From the IMG/VR virus record IMGVR_UViG_3300046536_000256, positions 1 to 64,000 of that record: a DNA stretch of 64,000 nucleotides, one strand, 5' to 3'. A program made the position numbers and the translations under genes. A model generated the notes under the pieces. The model saw only the letters and a list, made by a program, of their open reading frames with translations. It did no database searches and was not told the origin of the DNA. The stretch's first letter is position 1, and the number at the start of each line of letters is the position of its first letter. This document shows positions 3,731-56,469 of the stretch, piece by piece.

Positions 3731-5434
3731 TTAACGCTTCATCGGTACAGCGGACAACTTGTCGCCCAGCAGGATGCTGCTTGCGTTGGCCAAGATCTTG
3801 GCAGTTTGCAAGCCGCCCTTCAGTGCGGTGATGGTAGCGTAGGCGGTGTCGTAAACCCCCAGCTCCTCACTGGTACCCGTCTCCCCGGTTGCCAGGTTGG
3901 TGCATGGAGGAACCACGTCACCCTCTATAGAGTTCCAGCGGAGTTCTTTGAACGGGGATACCTCGTCAGATGTCTGCCGCATCAGGTGGTTGTGCGAGGC
4001 GTAGCACACCTCGGCAAGCGCGGAGATGATCATGACCTTGATGGCGATTTCACGCTCATGCGGGGTGTCGGTGCCATCCTTGAATGGATCCGGCAGTTCC
4101 CTGTACAAACGAGTCAGAACACGCTTGCCCGCCGTTACCAGCGACGACCCCACGCCTGGCAACACACCGTTCACCAGAGCGCTCTTGACTGCCTTCACAA
4201 CGTCCTCGAACCGGTCAATGCGTTCTTTTACGTCCGAGTAGGTTTCGCCACCCACAAAGATCGTGATGAGCTCACCGCGCAGGTTACGGATACGCGTCTC
4301 GTTGAACTTGGCCCGCACACTGAAACGGTCACCCATTTCATACGAACTCAGTTCTTGTGCCACCGCATCAGCCCGAGCATTCAGCAACGCACGGGTTTCG
4401 TCGGGGATGTTGCTCAGGATCGAGCGAGTCCCATTGACAGTCAGGGTGCTCTGAACGATTGGAGCTCCGTGACTATTCAGCACGTCTTCCAAGTTGGTGT
4501 AGATCGGCGCGCCAAACATGGTCGCGATATCTTGCATCAACAGAGTGCCGACTGAACCACCGGCGTTGGTGTTGATAGCAACAAAGAACGCCGCGGGAAC
4601 ACCTTCCGGTTTACCAGTAACCCGTTCTTTAGCGCGCTGCGCTGCGGTAGCCGCGTTGAGGCGAGCCATGATCTGGCAAGTATCGTGTTCAACCGAACGA
4701 CCGATGACCAACACGGTACGACCACCTAGGCACATCGACAAGTTGATCAGCGTTTCCGAAAGGTCAGCCCCACGCCCCACATTACCGTCAATGATCAACG
4801 GGGTGAAGTCGGTGAAGTCGGTATCCCCACCATTGCCGTTCTTGGCAAAGCCTGGGTTACTGAACCCCATCTGAATCGGCAGGCCATTGGTGTGGACCAC
4901 TTTGTCTTCAGCCGTCTGCCCTTCCTTGAGTTCGATCTCAGGGTAGCGATCACCCGACGCCTTATAGATGTCGGTGATGATCTTGCTGAGTTCTTCGTCG
5001 TTGTTGGAGGAAGTCAGCGCCAGCTTGAACAGGCGTGGGTCGTCAACCGTAACGTTAACAGTCATGGCTTTCAGTTCTTCGATCACTGCGTTCATGCAGC
5101 TCTCAATGTACTTCTGTTCACGGAAGGTTGGGTGAGCGATAAAGACGTTGTACAACAACGACGTCAGCATCACGGTGGTGGTAGTGCCGTCGCCGCATTC
5201 GTGGTCGGTTTTGATCGCCGCTTCAGTAATCACGCGGTTGATCAGTTCGTGGCGTGGATCATCGAAGCGAATCGATTTAGCGACCGTCACGCCGTCCTTG
5301 GTGACCTTTACCGCGGTGCCGTTGGCAATGAACGCCAGCTTGCCGTTAGGACCCATGGTCGCGACTACAGCGCGTTTCACTTGGTCCACTACTTCTTTAA
5401 CGAATTCTTGGGTGTTAGCGATTGTTAGCATCAT
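3731..5434 (-). CDS. groEL: GroEL-like phage chaperonin
   Basis: TMGPNG, VTKDGVTVAKSI, GDGTTT ATP-binding motif, FED catalytic Asp region, GVLPGVG; 567 aa; no C-terminal GGM repeats. Confidence 0.95.
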   Translation of the reverse strand: MMLTIANTQEFVKEVVDQVKRAVVATMGPNGKLAFIANGTAVKVTKDGVTVAKSIRFDDPRHELINRVITEAAIKTDHECGDGTTTTVMLTSLLYNVFIAHPTFREQKYIESCMNAVIEELKAMTVNVTVDDPRLFKLALTSSNNDEELSKIITDIYKASGDRYPEIELKEGQTAEDKVVHTNGLPIQMGFSNPGFAKNGNGGDTDFTDFTPLIIDGNVGRGADLSETLINLSMCLGGRTVLVIGRSVEHDTCQIMARLNAATAAQRAKERVTGKPEGVPAAFFVAINTNAGGSVGTLLMQDIATMFGAPIYTNLEDVLNSHGAPIVQSTLTVNGTRSILSNIPDETRALLNARADAVAQELSSYEMGDRFSVRAKFNETRIRNLRGELITIFVGGETYSDVKERIDRFEDVVKAVKSALVNGVLPGVGSSLVTAGKRVLTRLYRELPDPFKDGTDTPHEREIAIKVMIISALAEVCYASHNHLMRQTSDEVSPFKELRWNSIEGDVVPPCTNLATGETGTSEELGVYDTAYATITALKGGLQTAKILANASSILLGDKLSAVPMKR

Positions 5435-19661: not shown

Positions 19662-20307
19662 GGTCTAATTCCTTTGAAAATTCACGTTCTTGACGAAGCT
19701 GGTTAATACGTCTAACCGCTTCAAATACTTGCGGCGGGTACTTGGTCTCATCGAACCAACCCCCAATGTACACTTCCAGACAACGGGTGCTGCGCAAGGC
19801 CTCTTTAAAGACCAAATGAATCCCGTTATCTACTTTGAAACTGATTAGGAATTTCCCCATTCCAATCAGCGTCTTGATCGTATCCCCGAGTACAACATTT
19901 GTTAGGCTACAGATGGGAGTACGATACTTCAGGCGGTCAGCAATCACCGCATGAAATTCCCGGGTCACCCCCAACGAGTGGAGTTTGTTCCAAGGCAATT
20001 CTTCTTTTACAACACGCTTAACACTGAGGAAGACCCCTTCGTATTCCGGGGTCCGACTGACAACGCTAAACTCTGCTACCCCTTGGCGCTTACGAGGACC
20101 CTTCTCCCAAGTGAACCCAGAGAGGGCTAACACAGGGTTGTCCTTGTGACCGCTCTTCAGGACACGGTCAGCGTAAGCTTTAAAGAACGGAGAGATCCCG
20201 CACCCTTCACCGATTGATTCGGCTATGTAGGGGCGGAGGCTATCCAAAGTTTTATGCAAATCCTTCACCTGACGAACATTGCTTATTGGCGCAATTTTTC
20301 CGTTCAT
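19615..20307 (-). CDS. hypothetical protein
   Basis: 230-aa ORF in a collinear minus-strand run. Confidence 0.65.
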   Translation of the reverse strand: MNGKIAPISNVRQVKDLHKTLDSLRPYIAESIGEGCGISPFFKAYADRVLKSGHKDNPVLALSGFTWEKGPRKRQGVAEFSVVSRTPEYEGVFLSVKRVVKEELPWNKLHSLGVTREFHAVIADRLKYRTPICSLTNVVLGDTIKTLIGMGKFLISFKVDNGIHLVFKEALRSTRCLEVYIGGWFDETKYPPQVFEAVRRINQLRQEREFSKELDHGPNHFARISSPQVS

Positions 20308-20352
20308 TACTGCTCTCTTATCCAGTCCATAGCGATTCCGGGTACAGTGGAA

Positions 20353-20709
20353 TCATCCCATAGACTCACGATCCCTTTCCATGTCCCGTCTGGTTTGCTC
20401 GTCCAGAGTAATGGTGTGCTGCTTGCACTTACCGCACTTGGACTCCTTAACCAGCTTGAACCCATAAGCAGAAATCAATACCGCTCGACCTTCTGCCATG
20501 ACTTGTGTAGTGATACACTGTCCTTTGCCTGGCAGTTTGACTTTGCGGAAGTTGTCGAATACCGACACACCAAAGGTAGCCAGCGCGTAGTCGTCGAAGA
20601 GCTCTTCTAAAGCTGCTTGGACATTCTCCTTGGGCAACCCCTCAAAGAACACGTCCAAGCGCTTACCGACCTCTTCAGCCACCTCATAATCGAATCGAGG
20701 TTCATTCAT
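20353..20709 (-). CDS. hypothetical protein
   Basis: 118 aa; overlaps the upstream stop; CGKC near the C-terminus. Confidence 0.65.
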   Translation of the reverse strand: MNEPRFDYEVAEEVGKRLDVFFEGLPKENVQAALEELFDDYALATFGVSVFDNFRKVKLPGKGQCITTQVMAEGRAVLISAYGFKLVKESKCGKCKQHTITLDEQTRRDMERDRESMG

Positions 20710-54596: not shown

Positions 54597-55175
54597 ATGT
54601 TTGCTTTTTTCAGTGGTGCATTCTTCACGGATAAAGTCCGGGGAGTGATTACCATGTTCCTTCTGGTGTTACTGGTTGGACTGTGGGGTGCTCAGTATTT
54701 CTGGCCTCGTCATGCGAATACGCTCGACGACCAGACCATCGATGCTTTGAAAGACGTTCGTGGTCAGCTGGAGCGTGTTGCCAATAACCTGGACAAGTCC
54801 AGTGAGGCACAGACGGCGTTGAACCAGACATTGGCCAGACAACTGGACTCCGCCAAACAAGTACGGGATGAAGGCTATGCGAAACTGTTTAAAGAGTATG
54901 GGCTGGATCTGGGCGTTGCTCCTGTTGACCCCAATGATCCTTTCGGGCTGCGGGCACCAGACCACGATCTCGGAGGGCAACCTGTACCTCCAAGCTCAGG
55001 CTCAGCAGGTGCAGATCAATACTTACAAGAGTCAGCTCCAAGCAACCAAGGCAAGACTAACCCAAGTGGTGCCGGAGGTTCAAAGCCAAAACCAGGAGCC
55101 ACCTCGGGCGCTACTGGCGGATCTAACGGTGTACCTGACCCAGAACGACTGCACGTCGTTTCCCGCGGCAGTTAA
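54597..55175 (+). CDS. putative inner-membrane spanin (i-spanin)
   Basis: Single N-terminal TM, then coiled coil; C-terminal half overlaps a lipoprotein ORF in the +1 frame. Confidence 0.6.
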   Translation: MFAFFSGAFFTDKVRGVITMFLLVLLVGLWGAQYFWPRHANTLDDQTIDALKDVRGQLERVANNLDKSSEAQTALNQTLARQLDSAKQVRDEGYAKLFKEYGLDLGVAPVDPNDPFGLRAPDHDLGGQPVPPSSGSAGADQYLQESAPSNQGKTNPSGAGGSKPKPGATSGATGGSNGVPDPERLHVVSRGS

Positions 55176-55347
55176 AGACCAGTGTTATAAGGCAACCCGG
55201 GTCAAGCTAATCGAAGTCACGCGTCTCCTTGATGAAACCAAGATGCGTGAATACGCCGGTCAGCGAACCATTGCCCAATTGATTTCCAGTATCGACGTCT
55301 TGATTGACGGGATGGCCACTCCGGAACCACTGAAGCCACCTGAATAG
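54868..55347 (+). CDS. putative outer-membrane lipoprotein spanin (o-spanin)
   Basis: Hydrophobic WIWALLLLTPMI followed by lipobox LSG-C; start may be 54868, 54877 or 54898. Confidence 0.6.
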   Translation: MKAMRNCLKSMGWIWALLLLTPMILSGCGHQTTISEGNLYLQAQAQQVQINTYKSQLQATKARLTQVVPEVQSQNQEPPRALLADLTVYLTQNDCTSFPAAVKDQCYKATRVKLIEVTRLLDETKMREYAGQRTIAQLISSIDVLIDGMATPEPLKPPE

Positions 55348-55366
55348 TAAAACGCGACATAATCCA

Positions 55367-55408
55367 CTACCCTCCCCTGAGCCCTTTCGAGGCGCCAGGG
55401 GAGGGTAG
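55367..55408. terminator. bidirectional stem-loop with TATGT on both sides
   Basis: 13-bp stem CTACCCTCCCCTG / CAGGGGAGGGTAG between convergent genes. Confidence 0.7.
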
Positions 55409-55429
55409 GGGTATGTTTGCTTGGATTAC

Positions 55430-55882
55430 TTACGCAGCAGGTGTAGGCGGGTCATCAGGAGGCTTTGGAGCAATGGCTCCTGCTACTCGACTACGTATCT
55501 TGTCGGCCATTGGAGCAAGCTCCATCAACGTAGACAAGATCTTGTTCGCGTTCATCCACGTCCAAGCCACAATGATCGGACCCACGTTCATGATAACCAT
55601 GGAAAGGTTACTGGGCCAAACCCCATGAACAGTGACCGAGACGTTAGTGGTCCAGGCGTTTGCTAGTGCTGCAAGGCAAAGAGTCCACACTGCAACCGCA
55701 CCAAAGATGTTGCGCAGTATGACACTCCATTTCCCAAACACTTCCCGTTCAATCCCACCAGGTATATGCGTGGAATCGACGAGAGTGACTGGGGCTACTT
55801 CTTTTTCTGGTTCAGGTGGTGGGAGAGGTCCAGGGCTCGGTGTTTCGCCTGGTCCGCTTCCGATAGGATCGACAGTGGCCAT
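55430..55882 (-). CDS. two-TM membrane protein, holin candidate
   Basis: Two hydrophobic helices flanked by Pro-rich termini; adjacent to the spanin-like pair. Confidence 0.45.
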   Translation of the reverse strand: MATVDPIGSGPGETPSPGPLPPPEPEKEVAPVTLVDSTHIPGGIEREVFGKWSVILRNIFGAVAVWTLCLAALANAWTTNVSVTVHGVWPSNLSMVIMNVGPIIVAWTWMNANKILSTLMELAPMADKIRSRVAGAIAPKPPDDPPTPAA

Positions 55883-56469
55883 TGTTGGTACACCCCATAA
55901 TCTTTTGCTATTTGTTCACAACGGTACAGGGCAATGGCGCCAGCGTCAGTGGTGTGTTCATCCATCAATGAGATATCAAAATCACCAGCTTCAAGCCCGC
56001 CGTATTCCTTAAGGCCTTTTTGTACATCTTCTTTGGTAGTACCCCGGAAGTTTGCTTTCACAATTTCCTTGGCTTGGTTCGGCAGCACATACGACAAGTG
56101 TACATCGTTTTCAGTGAAGGACTGCCGGAGTAACGCAACGCACTGAATCAACTGCTTGAACGTCAGAGGAGACATCCCCATGAAGTTATCTTCGCAGATC
56201 CCCGTGTCCGGTTGATGAATCTCAACCAAGGTCTTGAGGCTGCGATACAAGCCGTAGGTTCTTGCCAGGAGCTTGGTACCTGCCAGGTCATCGAACTGGA
56301 CGGGAATGTCGTAGAGCACCTTCTCACCGTAGATCGTGTTGGCGTAAACCAACTTAAACTTCTCCGACTTCTCAATGTTCACATCTACGACAAACACACC
56401 CATGTTGGTGGTTGAAGGGTCAATCCCCATGACCCTTACTACACCAGGATGCCTTAGACCCTTAGGCAT
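55795..56469 (-). CDS. ruvC: RuvC-like Holliday junction resolvase
   Basis: VMGIDPSTTNMG, ICEDNF, TKEDVQ, EHTTDAGAIA acidic catalytic residues. Confidence 0.82.
   Translation of the reverse strand: MPKGLRHPGVVRVMGIDPSTTNMGVFVVDVNIEKSEKFKLVYANTIYGEKVLYDIPVQFDDLAGTKLLARTYGLYRSLKTLVEIHQPDTGICEDNFMGMSPLTFKQLIQCVALLRQSFTENDVHLSYVLPNQAKEIVKANFRGTTKEDVQKGLKEYGGLEAGDFDISLMDEHTTDAGAIALYRCEQIAKDYGVYQQWPLSILSEADQAKHRALDLSHHLNQKKK

What the first reader, a model, noticed from the sequence alone, without database searches (positions are those of the whole stretch)
54597..55347. Overlapping i-spanin/o-spanin-like pair in a phiKZ-type genome
Seen: a TM-anchored coiled-coil ORF whose last ~280-310 nt are overlapped in the +1 frame by a lipobox (LSG-C) ORF. 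The overlapped i-spanin tail is G/P/S low-complexity, as expected for dual coding. The lipoprotein is unusually long (~130 aa mature), helical, not Pro-rich, and has two further Cys. Established: Rz/Rz1-type overlapping spanins disrupt the outer membrane. To my knowledge, lysis accessory genes are poorly annotated in this phage group.
Basis: partly seen in the sequence, partly recalled or inferred. Interest (0 to 1): 0.65.

Follow-up and report, generated by a model that had tools for sequence, protein, structure and literature searches.

The report
Overlapping spanin gene pair, EL/OBP type
This is a real pair of overlapping phage genes, an inner-membrane-anchored helical protein and an outer-membrane lipoprotein, that most likely breaks the host's outer membrane at lysis; the same pair was already catalogued as a spanin in phages EL, OBP and Miami, so it is a correct but ordinary annotation.

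Summary
ORF A (54597-55175, 192 aa) has an N-terminal transmembrane helix, one long periplasmic helix and a G/P/S-rich disordered tail. ORF B (54868 or 54877 to 55347) lies in the +1 frame, overlaps A by 299-308 nt, and encodes a signal peptide with lipobox ILSG|C and a 132-aa helical mature domain with two further cysteines.

Both refutation criteria fail. All 20 related jumbo phages examined keep the transmembrane ORF, the +1-frame lipobox ORF, the same gene neighbourhood and all three cysteines. Substitution patterns show that both frames are coding, with the lipoprotein frame dominating inside the overlap.

The pair meets every architectural criterion of a two-component spanin. It shows no sequence homology to lambda Rz/Rz1, T4 PseT.3/PseT.2 or the experimentally proven phiKZ gp141/gp141.1.

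It is not new. Its orthologues were listed as overlapped spanins in Kongari et al. 2018 (EL gp111; OBP_140/139, with a curator's doubt), and are annotated as Rz1-like in OBP and as i-/o-spanin in Klebsiella phage Miami. No member of this family has been tested at the bench.

Verdict: new member of a known kind, low interest.

The parts
54597..55175 (+). i-spanin candidate gene (192 aa): short cytoplasmic N-terminus, one transmembrane helix, one long periplasmic helix, disordered tail
   Evidence: ORF. phrog_21243 at E 5.5e-28, with weak sub-threshold matches to Rz-like spanin models (phrog_2975 E 2.9e-4; TIGR03495 LysB 15 bits). AF2 model. Substitutions peak at its codon position 3 in the non-overlapped part.
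54645..54701 (+). transmembrane segment of the i-spanin (about residues 17-35)
   Evidence: Kyte-Doolittle maximum; helix 12-35 in the AF2 model; a hydrophobic segment is present at this place in all 20 relatives.
54723..54899 (+). single long periplasmic helix of the i-spanin (residues 43-101), ending in the conserved Y..(K)YG motif
   Evidence: AF2 helix 43-101 with pLDDT 70-87. Y94, Y101 and G102 are invariant or nearly so in alignments A2 and A4 and in the 20-phage alignment.
54900..55172 (+). G/P/S-rich, disordered, dual-coded tail of the i-spanin (residues 102-192)
   Evidence: pLDDT below 50. 41% G+P+S over the overlap part, residues 91-192. Identity to relatives is 10-40% against 23-71% for the helix. 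Length after the YG motif varies from about 30 to 90 aa in relatives. The frame stays open longer than a synonymous-resampling null (P 0.039 here; 18 of 19 phages above the null median).
54868..55347 (+). o-spanin candidate gene (159 aa from the first ATG; 156 aa from the conserved start at 54877), in the +1 frame relative to the i-spanin
   Evidence: ORF. phrog_17307 at E 1.7e-31. tblastn hits in 44 jumbo-phage records, some annotated o-spanin or Rz1-like. Substitutions peak at its codon position 3 both inside and outside the overlap.
54868..54951 (+). lipoprotein signal peptide with lipobox ILSG|C; the Cys28 codon is 54949-54951 and residue +2 is Gly (no Asp retention signal)
Evidence: A lipobox Cys is present in 20 of 20 relatives (LSGC, LTGC, LPGC, LVGC, LSAC, VTGC, LSSC, VMGC, MTSC, ISSC, LAGC, LTAC, VSAC, LVAC and others).
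54868..55175 (+). dual-coding overlap (308 nt; 299 nt from the conserved start)
   Evidence: The offset is +1 in all 20 phages.
55150..55185 (+). codons of the two conserved periplasmic cysteines, Cys95 and Cys106, flanking a loop of variable sequence between helices 2 and 3
   Evidence: Both are invariant in alignments A1 and A3. In the 20-phage set the second Cys lies 66-67 residues after the lipid Cys and the third lies 9-13 residues further on. The AF2 model has a break between H80-92 and H100-148.
55354..55420 (.). strong GC-rich hairpin between the o-spanin stop and the end of the convergent gene; a likely bidirectional transcript end
   Evidence: RNA fold -45.5 kcal/mol, z-score -5.9, 0 of 200 shuffles as good. 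A terminator is annotated at the same place in phage Miami. The sigma-70/intrinsic-terminator scan did not call it because there is no T run.

Best explanation
The two genes encode a two-component spanin of the EL/OBP type in an uncultivated phiKZ-like (chimalli-type) jumbo phage from rhizosphere metagenomes.

Shown here: gene A gives a type-II inner-membrane protein with one N-terminal transmembrane helix, one 59-residue periplasmic helix and a disordered tail. Gene B, read in the +1 frame from inside A, gives a lipoprotein precursor whose mature 132-aa helical domain carries two conserved cysteines.

Inferred from established knowledge of spanins (lambda Rz/Rz1, T4 PseT.3/PseT.2, phiKZ gp141/gp141.1):
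- B is lipidated at Cys28 and sorted by Lol to the inner leaflet of the outer membrane.
- A and B form a complex across the periplasm that stays trapped in the peptidoglycan mesh during late infection.
- Once the holin and the unlinked endolysin remove the wall, the complex collapses and fuses or ruptures the outer membrane, releasing the progeny.
- The Cys95/Cys106 pair probably forms a disulfide. It would either staple the loop between helices 2 and 3 or, as in T4 PseT.2, isomerise to intermolecular links.
- The i-spanin tail is mostly a passenger of the lipoprotein frame, selected chiefly to remain open.
For: (1) Architecture. Transmembrane helix plus periplasmic helix in A; signal peptide, lipobox and non-Asp +2 residue in B; B starts inside A in the +1 frame.

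(2) Conservation. All 20 phages examined keep these features and the synteny: structural gene (phrog_3337), then i, then o, then a hairpin, then a convergent 2-TM protein gene and RuvC. The set is the window, four other UViGs, EL, RisingSun, Miami, ZK_P1, FishSpeaker, CF8, ZPAH34, AH04, D3, SXP01, Kc263, Survivor, pEt-SU and OBP. Their hosts include Pseudomonas, Erwinia, Klebsiella, Aeromonas, Shewanella, Edwardsiella, Kosakonia, Pantoea and Raoultella.

(3) Both frames are coding. Substitutions against three relatives peak at codon position 3 of A upstream of the overlap (48 of 90 against 27 and 14). They peak at position 3 of B downstream (32 of 57 against 13 and 6) and also inside the overlap (33 of 73 against 16 and 8). 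The A frame stays open past the lipobox Cys longer than the synonymous-resampling null median in 18 of 19 phages.

(4) Expert annotation of orthologues. EL gp111 is listed as an overlapped i-spanin with a re-called o-spanin, and OBP_140 likewise, in the supplement of Kongari et al. 2018 (PMC6139136). Miami gp052 and gp051 are annotated 'i-spanin' and 'o-spanin'. OBP_139/140 are annotated 'lambda Rz1-like'. OBP's pair is homologous to this one (hhalign 99.5% and 97.8%).

(5) The same genomic slot holds a different spanin-like pair in Serratia phage PCH45. There the 54th CDS, directly after the phrog_3337 gene, is a TM-anchored protein with an embedded lipobox ORF. gp54 is reported as a predicted Rz/spanin that is essential by Tn-seq (bioRxiv 10.64898/2025.12.19.695335).

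(6) It is the only credible lipoprotein or spanin candidate in the complete 233-kb genome, and no phiKZ-type LysC homologue exists there.

(7) Weak, sub-threshold similarity of A residues 22-92 to Rz-like i-spanin models appears in two libraries.

(8) A proven precedent exists for overlapped spanins in this phage group: phiKZ gp141/gp141.1 complement lambda RzamRz1am (PMC12894885).
Against: - No experiment exists for any member of this family.
- There is no detectable homology to lambda Rz, T4 PseT.3/PseT.2 or phiKZ gp141/gp141.1 beyond the signal peptide, and nothing above threshold in Pfam or NCBIfam.
- The pair is not next to the endolysin candidate, which lies about 123 kb away, and no holin is identified.
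- The i-spanin C-terminus, which in lambda contacts the o-spanin, is here poorly conserved and of variable length.
- The coiled-coil character is not demonstrated.
- No RNA data are available.
Confidence: 0.8

Rival explanations
1. The pair is an envelope-modifying system with another role, for example superinfection exclusion or receptor masking by a phage lipoprotein (as with T5 Llp or phi80 Cor), with the TM protein as a partner or an unrelated neighbour.
For: Phage lipoproteins with non-lytic roles exist (established knowledge). The mature lipoprotein is unusually long, helical and not Pro-rich. The pair is far from the endolysin. The 2018 curators doubted the OBP assignment.
Against: Exclusion lipoproteins are not known to come as a conserved +1-overlapped pair with a type-II membrane protein. 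The pair follows a late structural gene with a 2-nt gap. It is conserved across phages with many different hosts and therefore different receptors. The same slot carries a classical embedded Rz/Rz1-like pair in PCH45. No other spanin candidate exists in the genome.
Confidence: 0.08
2. Only the lipoprotein gene and the first ~103 codons of gene A matter. The long G/P/S tail of A is a non-functional read-through that merely happens to lack stop codons, so the 'extensive dual coding' is incidental.
For: Inside the overlap the substitution pattern is that of frame B, and A's own third positions change least. Tail identity is low (10-40%). Tail length varies from about 30 to 90 aa, and in FishSpeaker A ends 2 codons past the lipobox Cys.
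Against: The A frame is open past the lipobox Cys for longer than the null median in 18 of 19 phages, with individual P values of 0.003-0.24, so some selection for an open tail is likely. Spanin partners are expected to touch through their distal ends (established for lambda). This rival modifies the main explanation rather than replacing it.
Confidence: 0.3
3. The two ORFs are virion-assembly or baseplate accessory proteins, because they sit inside a block of structural genes.
For: The upstream neighbour is a virion structural protein family (phrog_3337), and tail-fibre-like genes lie nearby.
Against: A lipobox signal peptide and a type-II membrane anchor direct both proteins to the envelope, outside the cytoplasm where these virions assemble. 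T4 also keeps its spanins away from its other lysis genes (PMC6139136).
Confidence: 0.03

Closest known systems
EL gp111 + re-called gp110, OBP_140/OBP_139, Klebsiella phage Miami gp052/gp051 (overlapped two-component spanins as catalogued or annotated; phrog_21243 + phrog_17307)
   Same: These are true orthologues. o-spanin tblastn against EL gives 1e-37 at 48% identity. hhalign against OBP gives 99.5% and 97.8% probability. They share the synteny, the +1 overlap, the lipobox, all three cysteines and the NDC...CYxxTRxxLI...LD motifs.
   Different: The window's i-spanin has the longest tail and the longest overlap of the set: 192 aa and 299-308 nt, against 130-181 aa and 50-299 nt in the relatives. 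The 2018 catalogue treated EL and OBP as separate singletons; here they fall into one family of at least 20 phages. No member has been tested experimentally.
phiKZ gp141/gp141.1 (Manohar et al. 2026, PMC12894885)
   Same: An overlapped i-/o-spanin pair in a nucleus-forming jumbo phage, lying beside a RuvC-like gene. The o-spanin is long (about 100 aa mature) with extra cysteines and its gene start was mis-annotated. Function is proven by lambda RzamRz1am complementation.
   Different: There is no detectable sequence similarity. The phiKZ o-spanin matches Pfam LysC PF23793 (E 3.6e-10), whereas the window's protein matches no Pfam family and the genome has no LysC match. In phiKZ the pair sits in a cassette with holin, regulator and endolysin; here the endolysin candidate is about 123 kb away.
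T4 PseT.3 / PseT.2
   Same: The spanin genes are unlinked to holin and endolysin. The o-spanin is not Pro-rich and has two conserved cysteines 11 residues apart. The i-spanin has no periplasmic cysteine (PMC6139136; the window's protein A has no Cys at all).
   Different: T4 has the separated, not the overlapped, architecture. hhalign aligns only the signal peptide region (22% probability; i-spanin 0.7%). The resemblance is an analogy, not a demonstrated homology.
Lambda Rz / Rz1
   Same: The same functional class and logic: a type-II inner-membrane protein plus an outer-membrane lipoprotein encoded in the +1 frame of the same DNA.
   Different: Rz1 is wholly embedded in Rz, only 40 aa when mature, and Pro-rich. 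Here the genes are overlapped, the mature lipoprotein is 132 aa and helical with 6% Pro, and there is no sequence similarity.
Serratia phage PCH45 gp54 with an embedded lipobox ORF
   Same: It occupies the same slot, directly downstream of the phrog_3337 structural gene. It is reported as a predicted Rz/spanin and essential by Tn-seq.
   Different: It has the embedded architecture, a short Pro-rich lipoprotein and a different PHROG family (phrog_37839). This suggests displacement in place, or divergence beyond recognition.

Membership tests
Two-component spanin (functional class, criteria of Kongari et al. 2018) | i-spanin: a single N-terminal transmembrane domain with the bulk of the protein in the periplasm (type II) | tested here: met
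   Hydrophobic segment at residues 14-35 (KD 2.1-2.3). AF2 helix 12-35, followed by 157 residues. Conserved in 20 phages. The topology itself is inferred.
Two-component spanin (functional class, criteria of Kongari et al. 2018) | i-spanin periplasmic domain dominated by alpha-helix or coiled coil | tested here: inconclusive
   One helix at residues 43-101 with pLDDT 70-87, but the remaining 91 residues are disordered and a heptad test was not significant (P 0.09).
Two-component spanin (functional class, criteria of Kongari et al. 2018) | o-spanin: signal peptidase II signal with a lipobox Cys and no inner-membrane retention residue | tested here: met
   n-region with K/R, h-region KD 2.02, ILSG|C, and Gly at +2. 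A lipobox is present in 20 of 20 relatives. Lipidation itself was not tested.
Two-component spanin (functional class, criteria of Kongari et al. 2018) | o-spanin gene embedded in, overlapping, or immediately downstream of the i-spanin gene on the same strand | tested here: met
   +1 frame with a 299-308 nt overlap; the offset is +1 in all 20 phages.
Two-component spanin (functional class, criteria of Kongari et al. 2018) | At least one periplasmic cysteine in the pair (507 of 528 catalogued systems) | tested here: met
   Cys95 and Cys106 of the o-spanin are invariant in the family. Disulfide formation was not tested.
Two-component spanin (functional class, criteria of Kongari et al. 2018) | Physical i-o complex spanning the periplasm | tested here: inconclusive
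   The one complex-prediction job returned 'no answer' (ipSAE 0.04).
Two-component spanin (functional class, criteria of Kongari et al. 2018) | Required for outer-membrane disruption; complements a spanin-defective phage | not testable with these tools
   This needs the lambda RzamRz1am complementation assay that was used for phiKZ (PMC12894885).
Lambda Rz/Rz1 and P2 LysB/LysC sequence families | Significant match to the family models (Pfam LysC PF23793, TIGR03495 LysB, Rz-like PHROGs) | tested here: not met
   Nothing in Pfam above cut-off. TIGR03495 scores 15 bits against a cut-off of 92.75. phrog_2975 gives only E 2.9e-4. hhalign against lambda Rz gives 0.5% probability. There is no LysC match in the genome.
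phiKZ gp141/gp141.1 family (phrog_7584 / phrog_24791) | Sequence similarity to the proven phiKZ spanins | tested here: not met
   BLASTP finds no alignment or gives E 28. hhalign gives 6% and 0.9% probability. The PHROG families differ.
EL/OBP-type chimallivirus pair (phrog_21243 + phrog_17307) | Significant sequence match of both proteins | tested here: met
   E 5.5e-28 and 1.7e-31. tblastn against EL gives 4e-19 and 1e-37. hhalign against OBP gives E 1.2e-12 and 5.2e-23.
EL/OBP-type chimallivirus pair (phrog_21243 + phrog_17307) | Conserved neighbourhood: phrog_3337 structural gene, then i, then o, then convergent 2-TM protein gene and RuvC-like gene | tested here: met
EL/OBP-type chimallivirus pair (phrog_21243 + phrog_17307) | Family signature: lipid Cys, second Cys 66-67 residues later, third Cys 9-13 further on, and the (N)DC...CY..TR..LI...LD motifs; in the i-spanin a Pro after the TM and the Y..YG motif | tested here: met

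The most novel reading that the evidence does not exclude
The EL/OBP-type pair may be a mechanistically distinct kind of spanin. In this reading a long three-helix outer-membrane lipoprotein with a disulfide-closed loop does much of the periplasm-spanning work, and it engages a single-helix i-spanin through its conserved Y..YG region or its dual-coded disordered tail, rather than through the Rz-type distal coiled-coil contact. More radically, it may be a periplasm-bridging complex whose role is not lysis at all, as the 2018 curators' doubt about OBP hints. A related point is that the chimallivirus slot downstream of the phrog_3337 gene has been refilled with unrelated spanin types (EL/OBP type or PCH45 embedded type). 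That would make it a natural case of in-place non-orthologous displacement of overlapping genes.
Probability: 0.12. Interest if true: 0.5.

Novelty: new member of a known kind. Interest (0 to 1): 0.2.

Why it matters
For this uncultivated rhizosphere jumbo phage, the result supplies the outer-membrane step of its lysis pathway.

It also allows a correction of annotation across relatives. Most GenBank records of related phages call both genes hypothetical, start the lipoprotein gene too late, or omit it.

It merges two 'singleton' spanin families of the 2018 catalogue (EL and OBP) into one family of at least 20 phages, with a clear sequence signature.

The wider significance is modest. Overlapped spanins are textbook, they have been proven in phiKZ, and this family was already suspected to be spanins. 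What remains open, and cheap to test, is whether this long, helical, Cys-stapled lipoprotein type really works as a spanin, and whether the dual-coded i-spanin tail is needed.

Tried and rejected
- Complex prediction of the two periplasmic domains gave no answer (score 0.04). It is not used as evidence either way.
- Foldseek of the o-spanin model against viral predicted structures found only the family's own members (RisingSun and LAh10 'Lipoprotein', N1M2 'Rz1-like', PDCC-1), with nothing outside.
- ESM Atlas look-alikes for the o-spanin and for the neighbouring 2-TM protein all scored below 0.85, so there were no usable leads.
- Pfam, NCBIfam and PDB sequence searches gave nothing above threshold.
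- Profile comparisons with phiKZ gp141/141.1, T4 PseT.3/PseT.2 and lambda Rz aligned only the signal peptide or TM. The shared 11-residue Cys spacing with T4 PseT.2 is therefore treated as analogy.
- The heptad (coiled-coil) test was inconclusive.
- The genome-wide lipobox pattern does not discriminate on its own (10 hits against 10.4 in shuffles). The one other candidate with a semi-hydrophobic core (genome 97315-97689, minus strand) was rejected because it is an off-frame ORF inside a soluble-looking gene without a TM anchor.
- The sigma-70 promoter and intrinsic-terminator scan found nothing relevant, as expected for phages that use their own RNA polymerases.
- Expression could not be checked. 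Only four DNA runs from rhizosphere metagenomes hold the stretch, and two of them may be the source. There are no RNA runs.
- The word-based protein search found only 9 close relatives. The large representative search was not run because the family and its annotation history were already clear.
- My first region fetches for phiKZ and T4 missed the genes and were repeated.
Full report
**1. What is in the sequence**

ORF A runs from 54597 to 55175 on the + strand (192 aa). Its ATG lies two bases after the stop codon of the upstream 412-aa gene. ORF B runs from 54868 to 55347 (159 aa) in the +1 frame, which gives a 308-nt overlap. The start conserved in relatives corresponds to the second ATG, at 54877, which is preceded by GAAGG. 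That start gives a 156-aa precursor and a 299-nt overlap.

Protein A has a hydrophobic segment at about residues 14-35. The AlphaFold2 model built on an 8-sequence alignment shows a helix at 12-35, a single long helix at 43-101, and no structure from residue 102 to the end (pLDDT below 50). The mean pLDDT is 59. The 102 residues encoded within the overlap are 41% Gly+Pro+Ser, against 11% in the rest of the protein.

Protein B has a basic n-region, a hydrophobic core, and the lipobox ILSG|C with Cys28 followed by Gly. Its mature part is 132 aa, contains only 8 prolines, and carries two more cysteines at positions 95 and 106. Its model (17 sequences, mean pLDDT 70) is all-helical: H34-66, a Pro-containing linker, H80-92, the Cys-bounded loop, and H100-148.

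'Coiled-coil' is not demonstrated, because a simple heptad test was not significant.

**2. Is it more than chance?**

A relaxed lipobox pattern on its own is not informative. It hits 10 ORFs in the complete 233,283-bp genome, against 10.4 on average in shuffled genomes. Only the ORF at 54868 combines the pattern with a truly hydrophobic core and is not buried in a longer ORF. The next-best candidate is off-frame inside a soluble-looking gene.

The decisive evidence is comparative. I collected the orthologous locus from 19 further phages:
- four other IMG/VR genomes
- Pseudomonas phages EL and OBP
- Erwinia phages RisingSun and AH04
- Klebsiella phage Miami
- Raoultella phage ZK_P1
- Shewanella phages FishSpeaker and SXP01
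- Aeromonas phages CF8, ZPAH34 and D3
- Kosakonia phage Kc263
- Pantoea phage Survivor
- Edwardsiella phage pEt-SU

In all 20 genomes a TM-anchored ORF is followed by a lipobox ORF in the +1 frame. The gene order is also constant: a phrog_3337 structural gene, the pair, then a convergent 2-TM protein gene and a RuvC-like gene. The lipid cysteine, a second cysteine 66-67 residues later, and a third cysteine 9-13 residues beyond that are invariant. So are the motifs (N)DC...CY..TR..LI...LD in the lipoprotein, and the Pro after the TM and the Y..YG motif in protein A.

**3. Are both frames really coding?**

I compared the window with its three closest relatives, counting substitutions by codon position (the counts quoted are against L007, the closest, and L008 and L009 point the same way).
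- Upstream of the overlap, substitutions pile up at A's third codon position: 48 of 90, against 27 and 14 at the other two positions.
- Downstream of the overlap, they pile up at B's third position: 32 of 57, against 13 and 6.
- Inside the overlap, they follow B's periodicity: 33 of 73 at B's position 3, 16 at position 1, and 8 at position 2.

So A's N-terminal two-thirds and the whole of B are under purifying selection. Within the overlap the lipoprotein frame sets the constraint.

The tail of A is poorly conserved (10-40% identity, against 23-71% for its helix). Its length after the YG motif varies from about 30 to 90 residues.

Even so, its frame stays open longer than expected. When the lipoprotein gene is re-coded with synonymous codons, the A frame stays open for a median of only 1-14 codons past the lipobox Cys. 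The observed values are 74 codons here (P 0.039) and 23-63 in most relatives. In 18 of 19 phages the observed value exceeds the null median. These phages are related, so the combined P value is not a true probability.

My reading is that the tail is largely a passenger of the lipoprotein frame, and that its G/P/S composition is a by-product of that frame's Q/A-rich helix. There is nevertheless selection for some open, flexible extension.

**4. What it is**

The pair meets every architectural criterion used to define two-component spanins:
- a type-II inner-membrane protein with a helical periplasmic domain
- an outer-membrane lipoprotein without an Asp retention signal
- the lipoprotein gene starting inside the membrane-protein gene on the same strand
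- periplasmic cysteines

It is the only credible candidate of this kind in a complete genome (CheckV 100%, direct terminal repeats) whose relatives all infect Gram-negative hosts.

The gene pair abuts a late structural gene and ends at a very stable hairpin (-45.5 kcal/mol, z -5.9). Phage Miami has an annotated terminator at the same place. This fits late co-expression.

The same slot in Serratia phage PCH45 carries a different spanin-like pair. The 54th CDS there is a TM-anchored 178-aa protein containing an unannotated embedded lipobox ORF. gp54 is reported as a predicted Rz/spanin that is essential in Tn-seq.

I therefore take the pair to be a spanin. The inferred mechanism, resting on established knowledge of lambda, T4 and phiKZ spanins, has these steps:
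- lipidation of protein B and Lol-dependent sorting to the outer membrane
- formation of a periplasm-spanning complex that is held in check by peptidoglycan
- collapse of the complex and fusion or rupture of the outer membrane once the unlinked endolysin candidate has degraded the wall (that candidate lies at genome 177758-178696, minus strand)

The invariant Cys pair flanks a loop of variable sequence. This suggests a disulfide-closed loop between helices 2 and 3. T4's PseT.2, which also has two conserved cysteines 11 residues apart and an i-spanin without cysteines, shows that such a pair can isomerise to intermolecular links (PMC6139136). I could not tell these two possibilities apart.

**5. 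Comparison with what is known**

The family is not new.
- The supplement of Kongari et al. 2018 lists EL gp111 as an overlapped i-spanin with a re-called o-spanin. [quoted passage not shown] Both appear as singleton families in the main text.
- OBP's genes are annotated 'lambda Rz1-like protein' in GenBank.
- Miami's are annotated 'i-spanin' and 'o-spanin' with a LipoP note.
- Several Aeromonas, Klebsiella and Shewanella records carry Rz1-like or o-spanin labels.

What I can add is that EL, OBP and the window belong to one family. hhalign against OBP gives 99.5% probability for the o-spanin and 97.8% for the i-spanin.

This family is unrelated in sequence to the spanins proven in phiKZ (gp141/gp141.1, PMC12894885). 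The phiKZ o-spanin belongs to Pfam LysC, while the window's protein matches nothing in Pfam and the genome has no LysC homologue. There is also no similarity to lambda Rz or to T4 PseT.3/PseT.2 beyond the signal or TM segments. Membership in the functional class is therefore supported by architecture, and membership in the Rz/Rz1 or phiKZ sequence families is rejected.

Both PHROG families are labelled 'unknown function'. EL gp110 starts 216 nt too late. AH04, CF8, D3, SXP01, Kc263 and pEt-SU have similarly truncated lipoprotein genes, and ZPAH34 has no lipoprotein CDS at all.

**6. What did not help**

Complex prediction gave no answer. Structure and language-model searches found nothing outside the family. 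No RNA runs hold the sequence; only rhizosphere DNA metagenomes do. See Tried and rejected for the rest.

**7. Verdict**

It is a new member of a known kind, in an uncultivated phage. A specialist would not be surprised. The residual interest lies in two points: this long helical o-spanin type has never been functionally verified, and the i-spanin tail appears to be a dual-coding passenger. Interest 0.2.

Noticed in passing
window 55430-55882 (- strand): A 150-aa protein with two predicted transmembrane segments, a Pro-rich N-terminus and a charged C-terminal tail lies convergent to the o-spanin. It is conserved next to the pair in all relatives (phrog_14084; tblastn hits in 85 jumbo-phage records, all 'hypothetical'). 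Its position beside the spanins and its topology make it a holin candidate. It shows no similarity to the phiKZ holin gp142 family (different PHROG family), and nothing was found in Pfam, NCBIfam or the ESM Atlas.
   Followed up: partly
window 55354-55420: A very stable GC-rich hairpin (-45.5 kcal/mol, z -5.9) sits between the convergent o-spanin and 2-TM genes. It has no T run, so the standard terminator scan misses it. Miami has an annotated terminator at the same place.
   Followed up: partly
window 55795-55882 (- strand): The start of the 2-TM gene overlaps the end of the RuvC-like resolvase gene (55795-56469) by 88 nt. A similar 70-nt overlap occurs in the closest relative, L007 (3418-3487). 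This is a second overlapping gene pair in the same neighbourhood.
   Followed up: no
L002 4833-5282 (EL); L016, L017, L018, L019, L020, L021, L023: GenBank annotation of the lipoprotein gene is wrong in many relatives. EL gp110 is started at 5049 instead of 4833, which loses the signal peptide and lipobox. AH04, CF8, D3, SXP01, Kc263 and pEt-SU have similarly truncated CDSs that avoid the overlap, and ZPAH34 has no CDS for it.
   Followed up: yes
L029 20186-20722 (- strand), Serratia phage PCH45: The 54th CDS of PCH45 (178 aa, TM-anchored) lies directly downstream of the phrog_3337 gene. It contains an unannotated embedded ORF in another frame (20215-20589) with a lipobox (SLVG|C) and a Pro-rich mature part. 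This is a classical Rz/Rz1-like embedded pair in the same slot as the window's overlapped pair.
   Followed up: partly
L005 7909-9611 (phiKZ) versus window 54597-56469: In phiKZ the RuvC-like gene gp140 is directly upstream of the spanin pair and the holin gp142 is directly downstream. In the EL/OBP-type phages the RuvC-like gene is one gene away from the pair, in convergent orientation. The RuvC-spanin linkage therefore seems old in these phages even though the spanin sequences are unrelated.
   Followed up: no
L006 925-1863 (- strand) = genome 177758-178696, outside the window: This is a likely modular endolysin (313 aa). It has N-terminal PG_binding_1 repeats and a C-terminal lysozyme-like domain that matches endolysin and baseplate-hub PHROGs. 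It lies about 123 kb from the spanin pair, so the lysis genes are dispersed as in EL and T4.
   Followed up: partly
whole genome G000 (window = bases 1-64000): The window comes from a complete IMG/VR virus genome of 233,283 bp with direct terminal repeats and 51.8% GC. It is found at full word share only in two rhizosphere metagenome runs, which may be its source. Its closest relatives are other uncultivated genomes (74% and 59% o-spanin identity), followed by Pseudomonas phage EL.
   Followed up: partly
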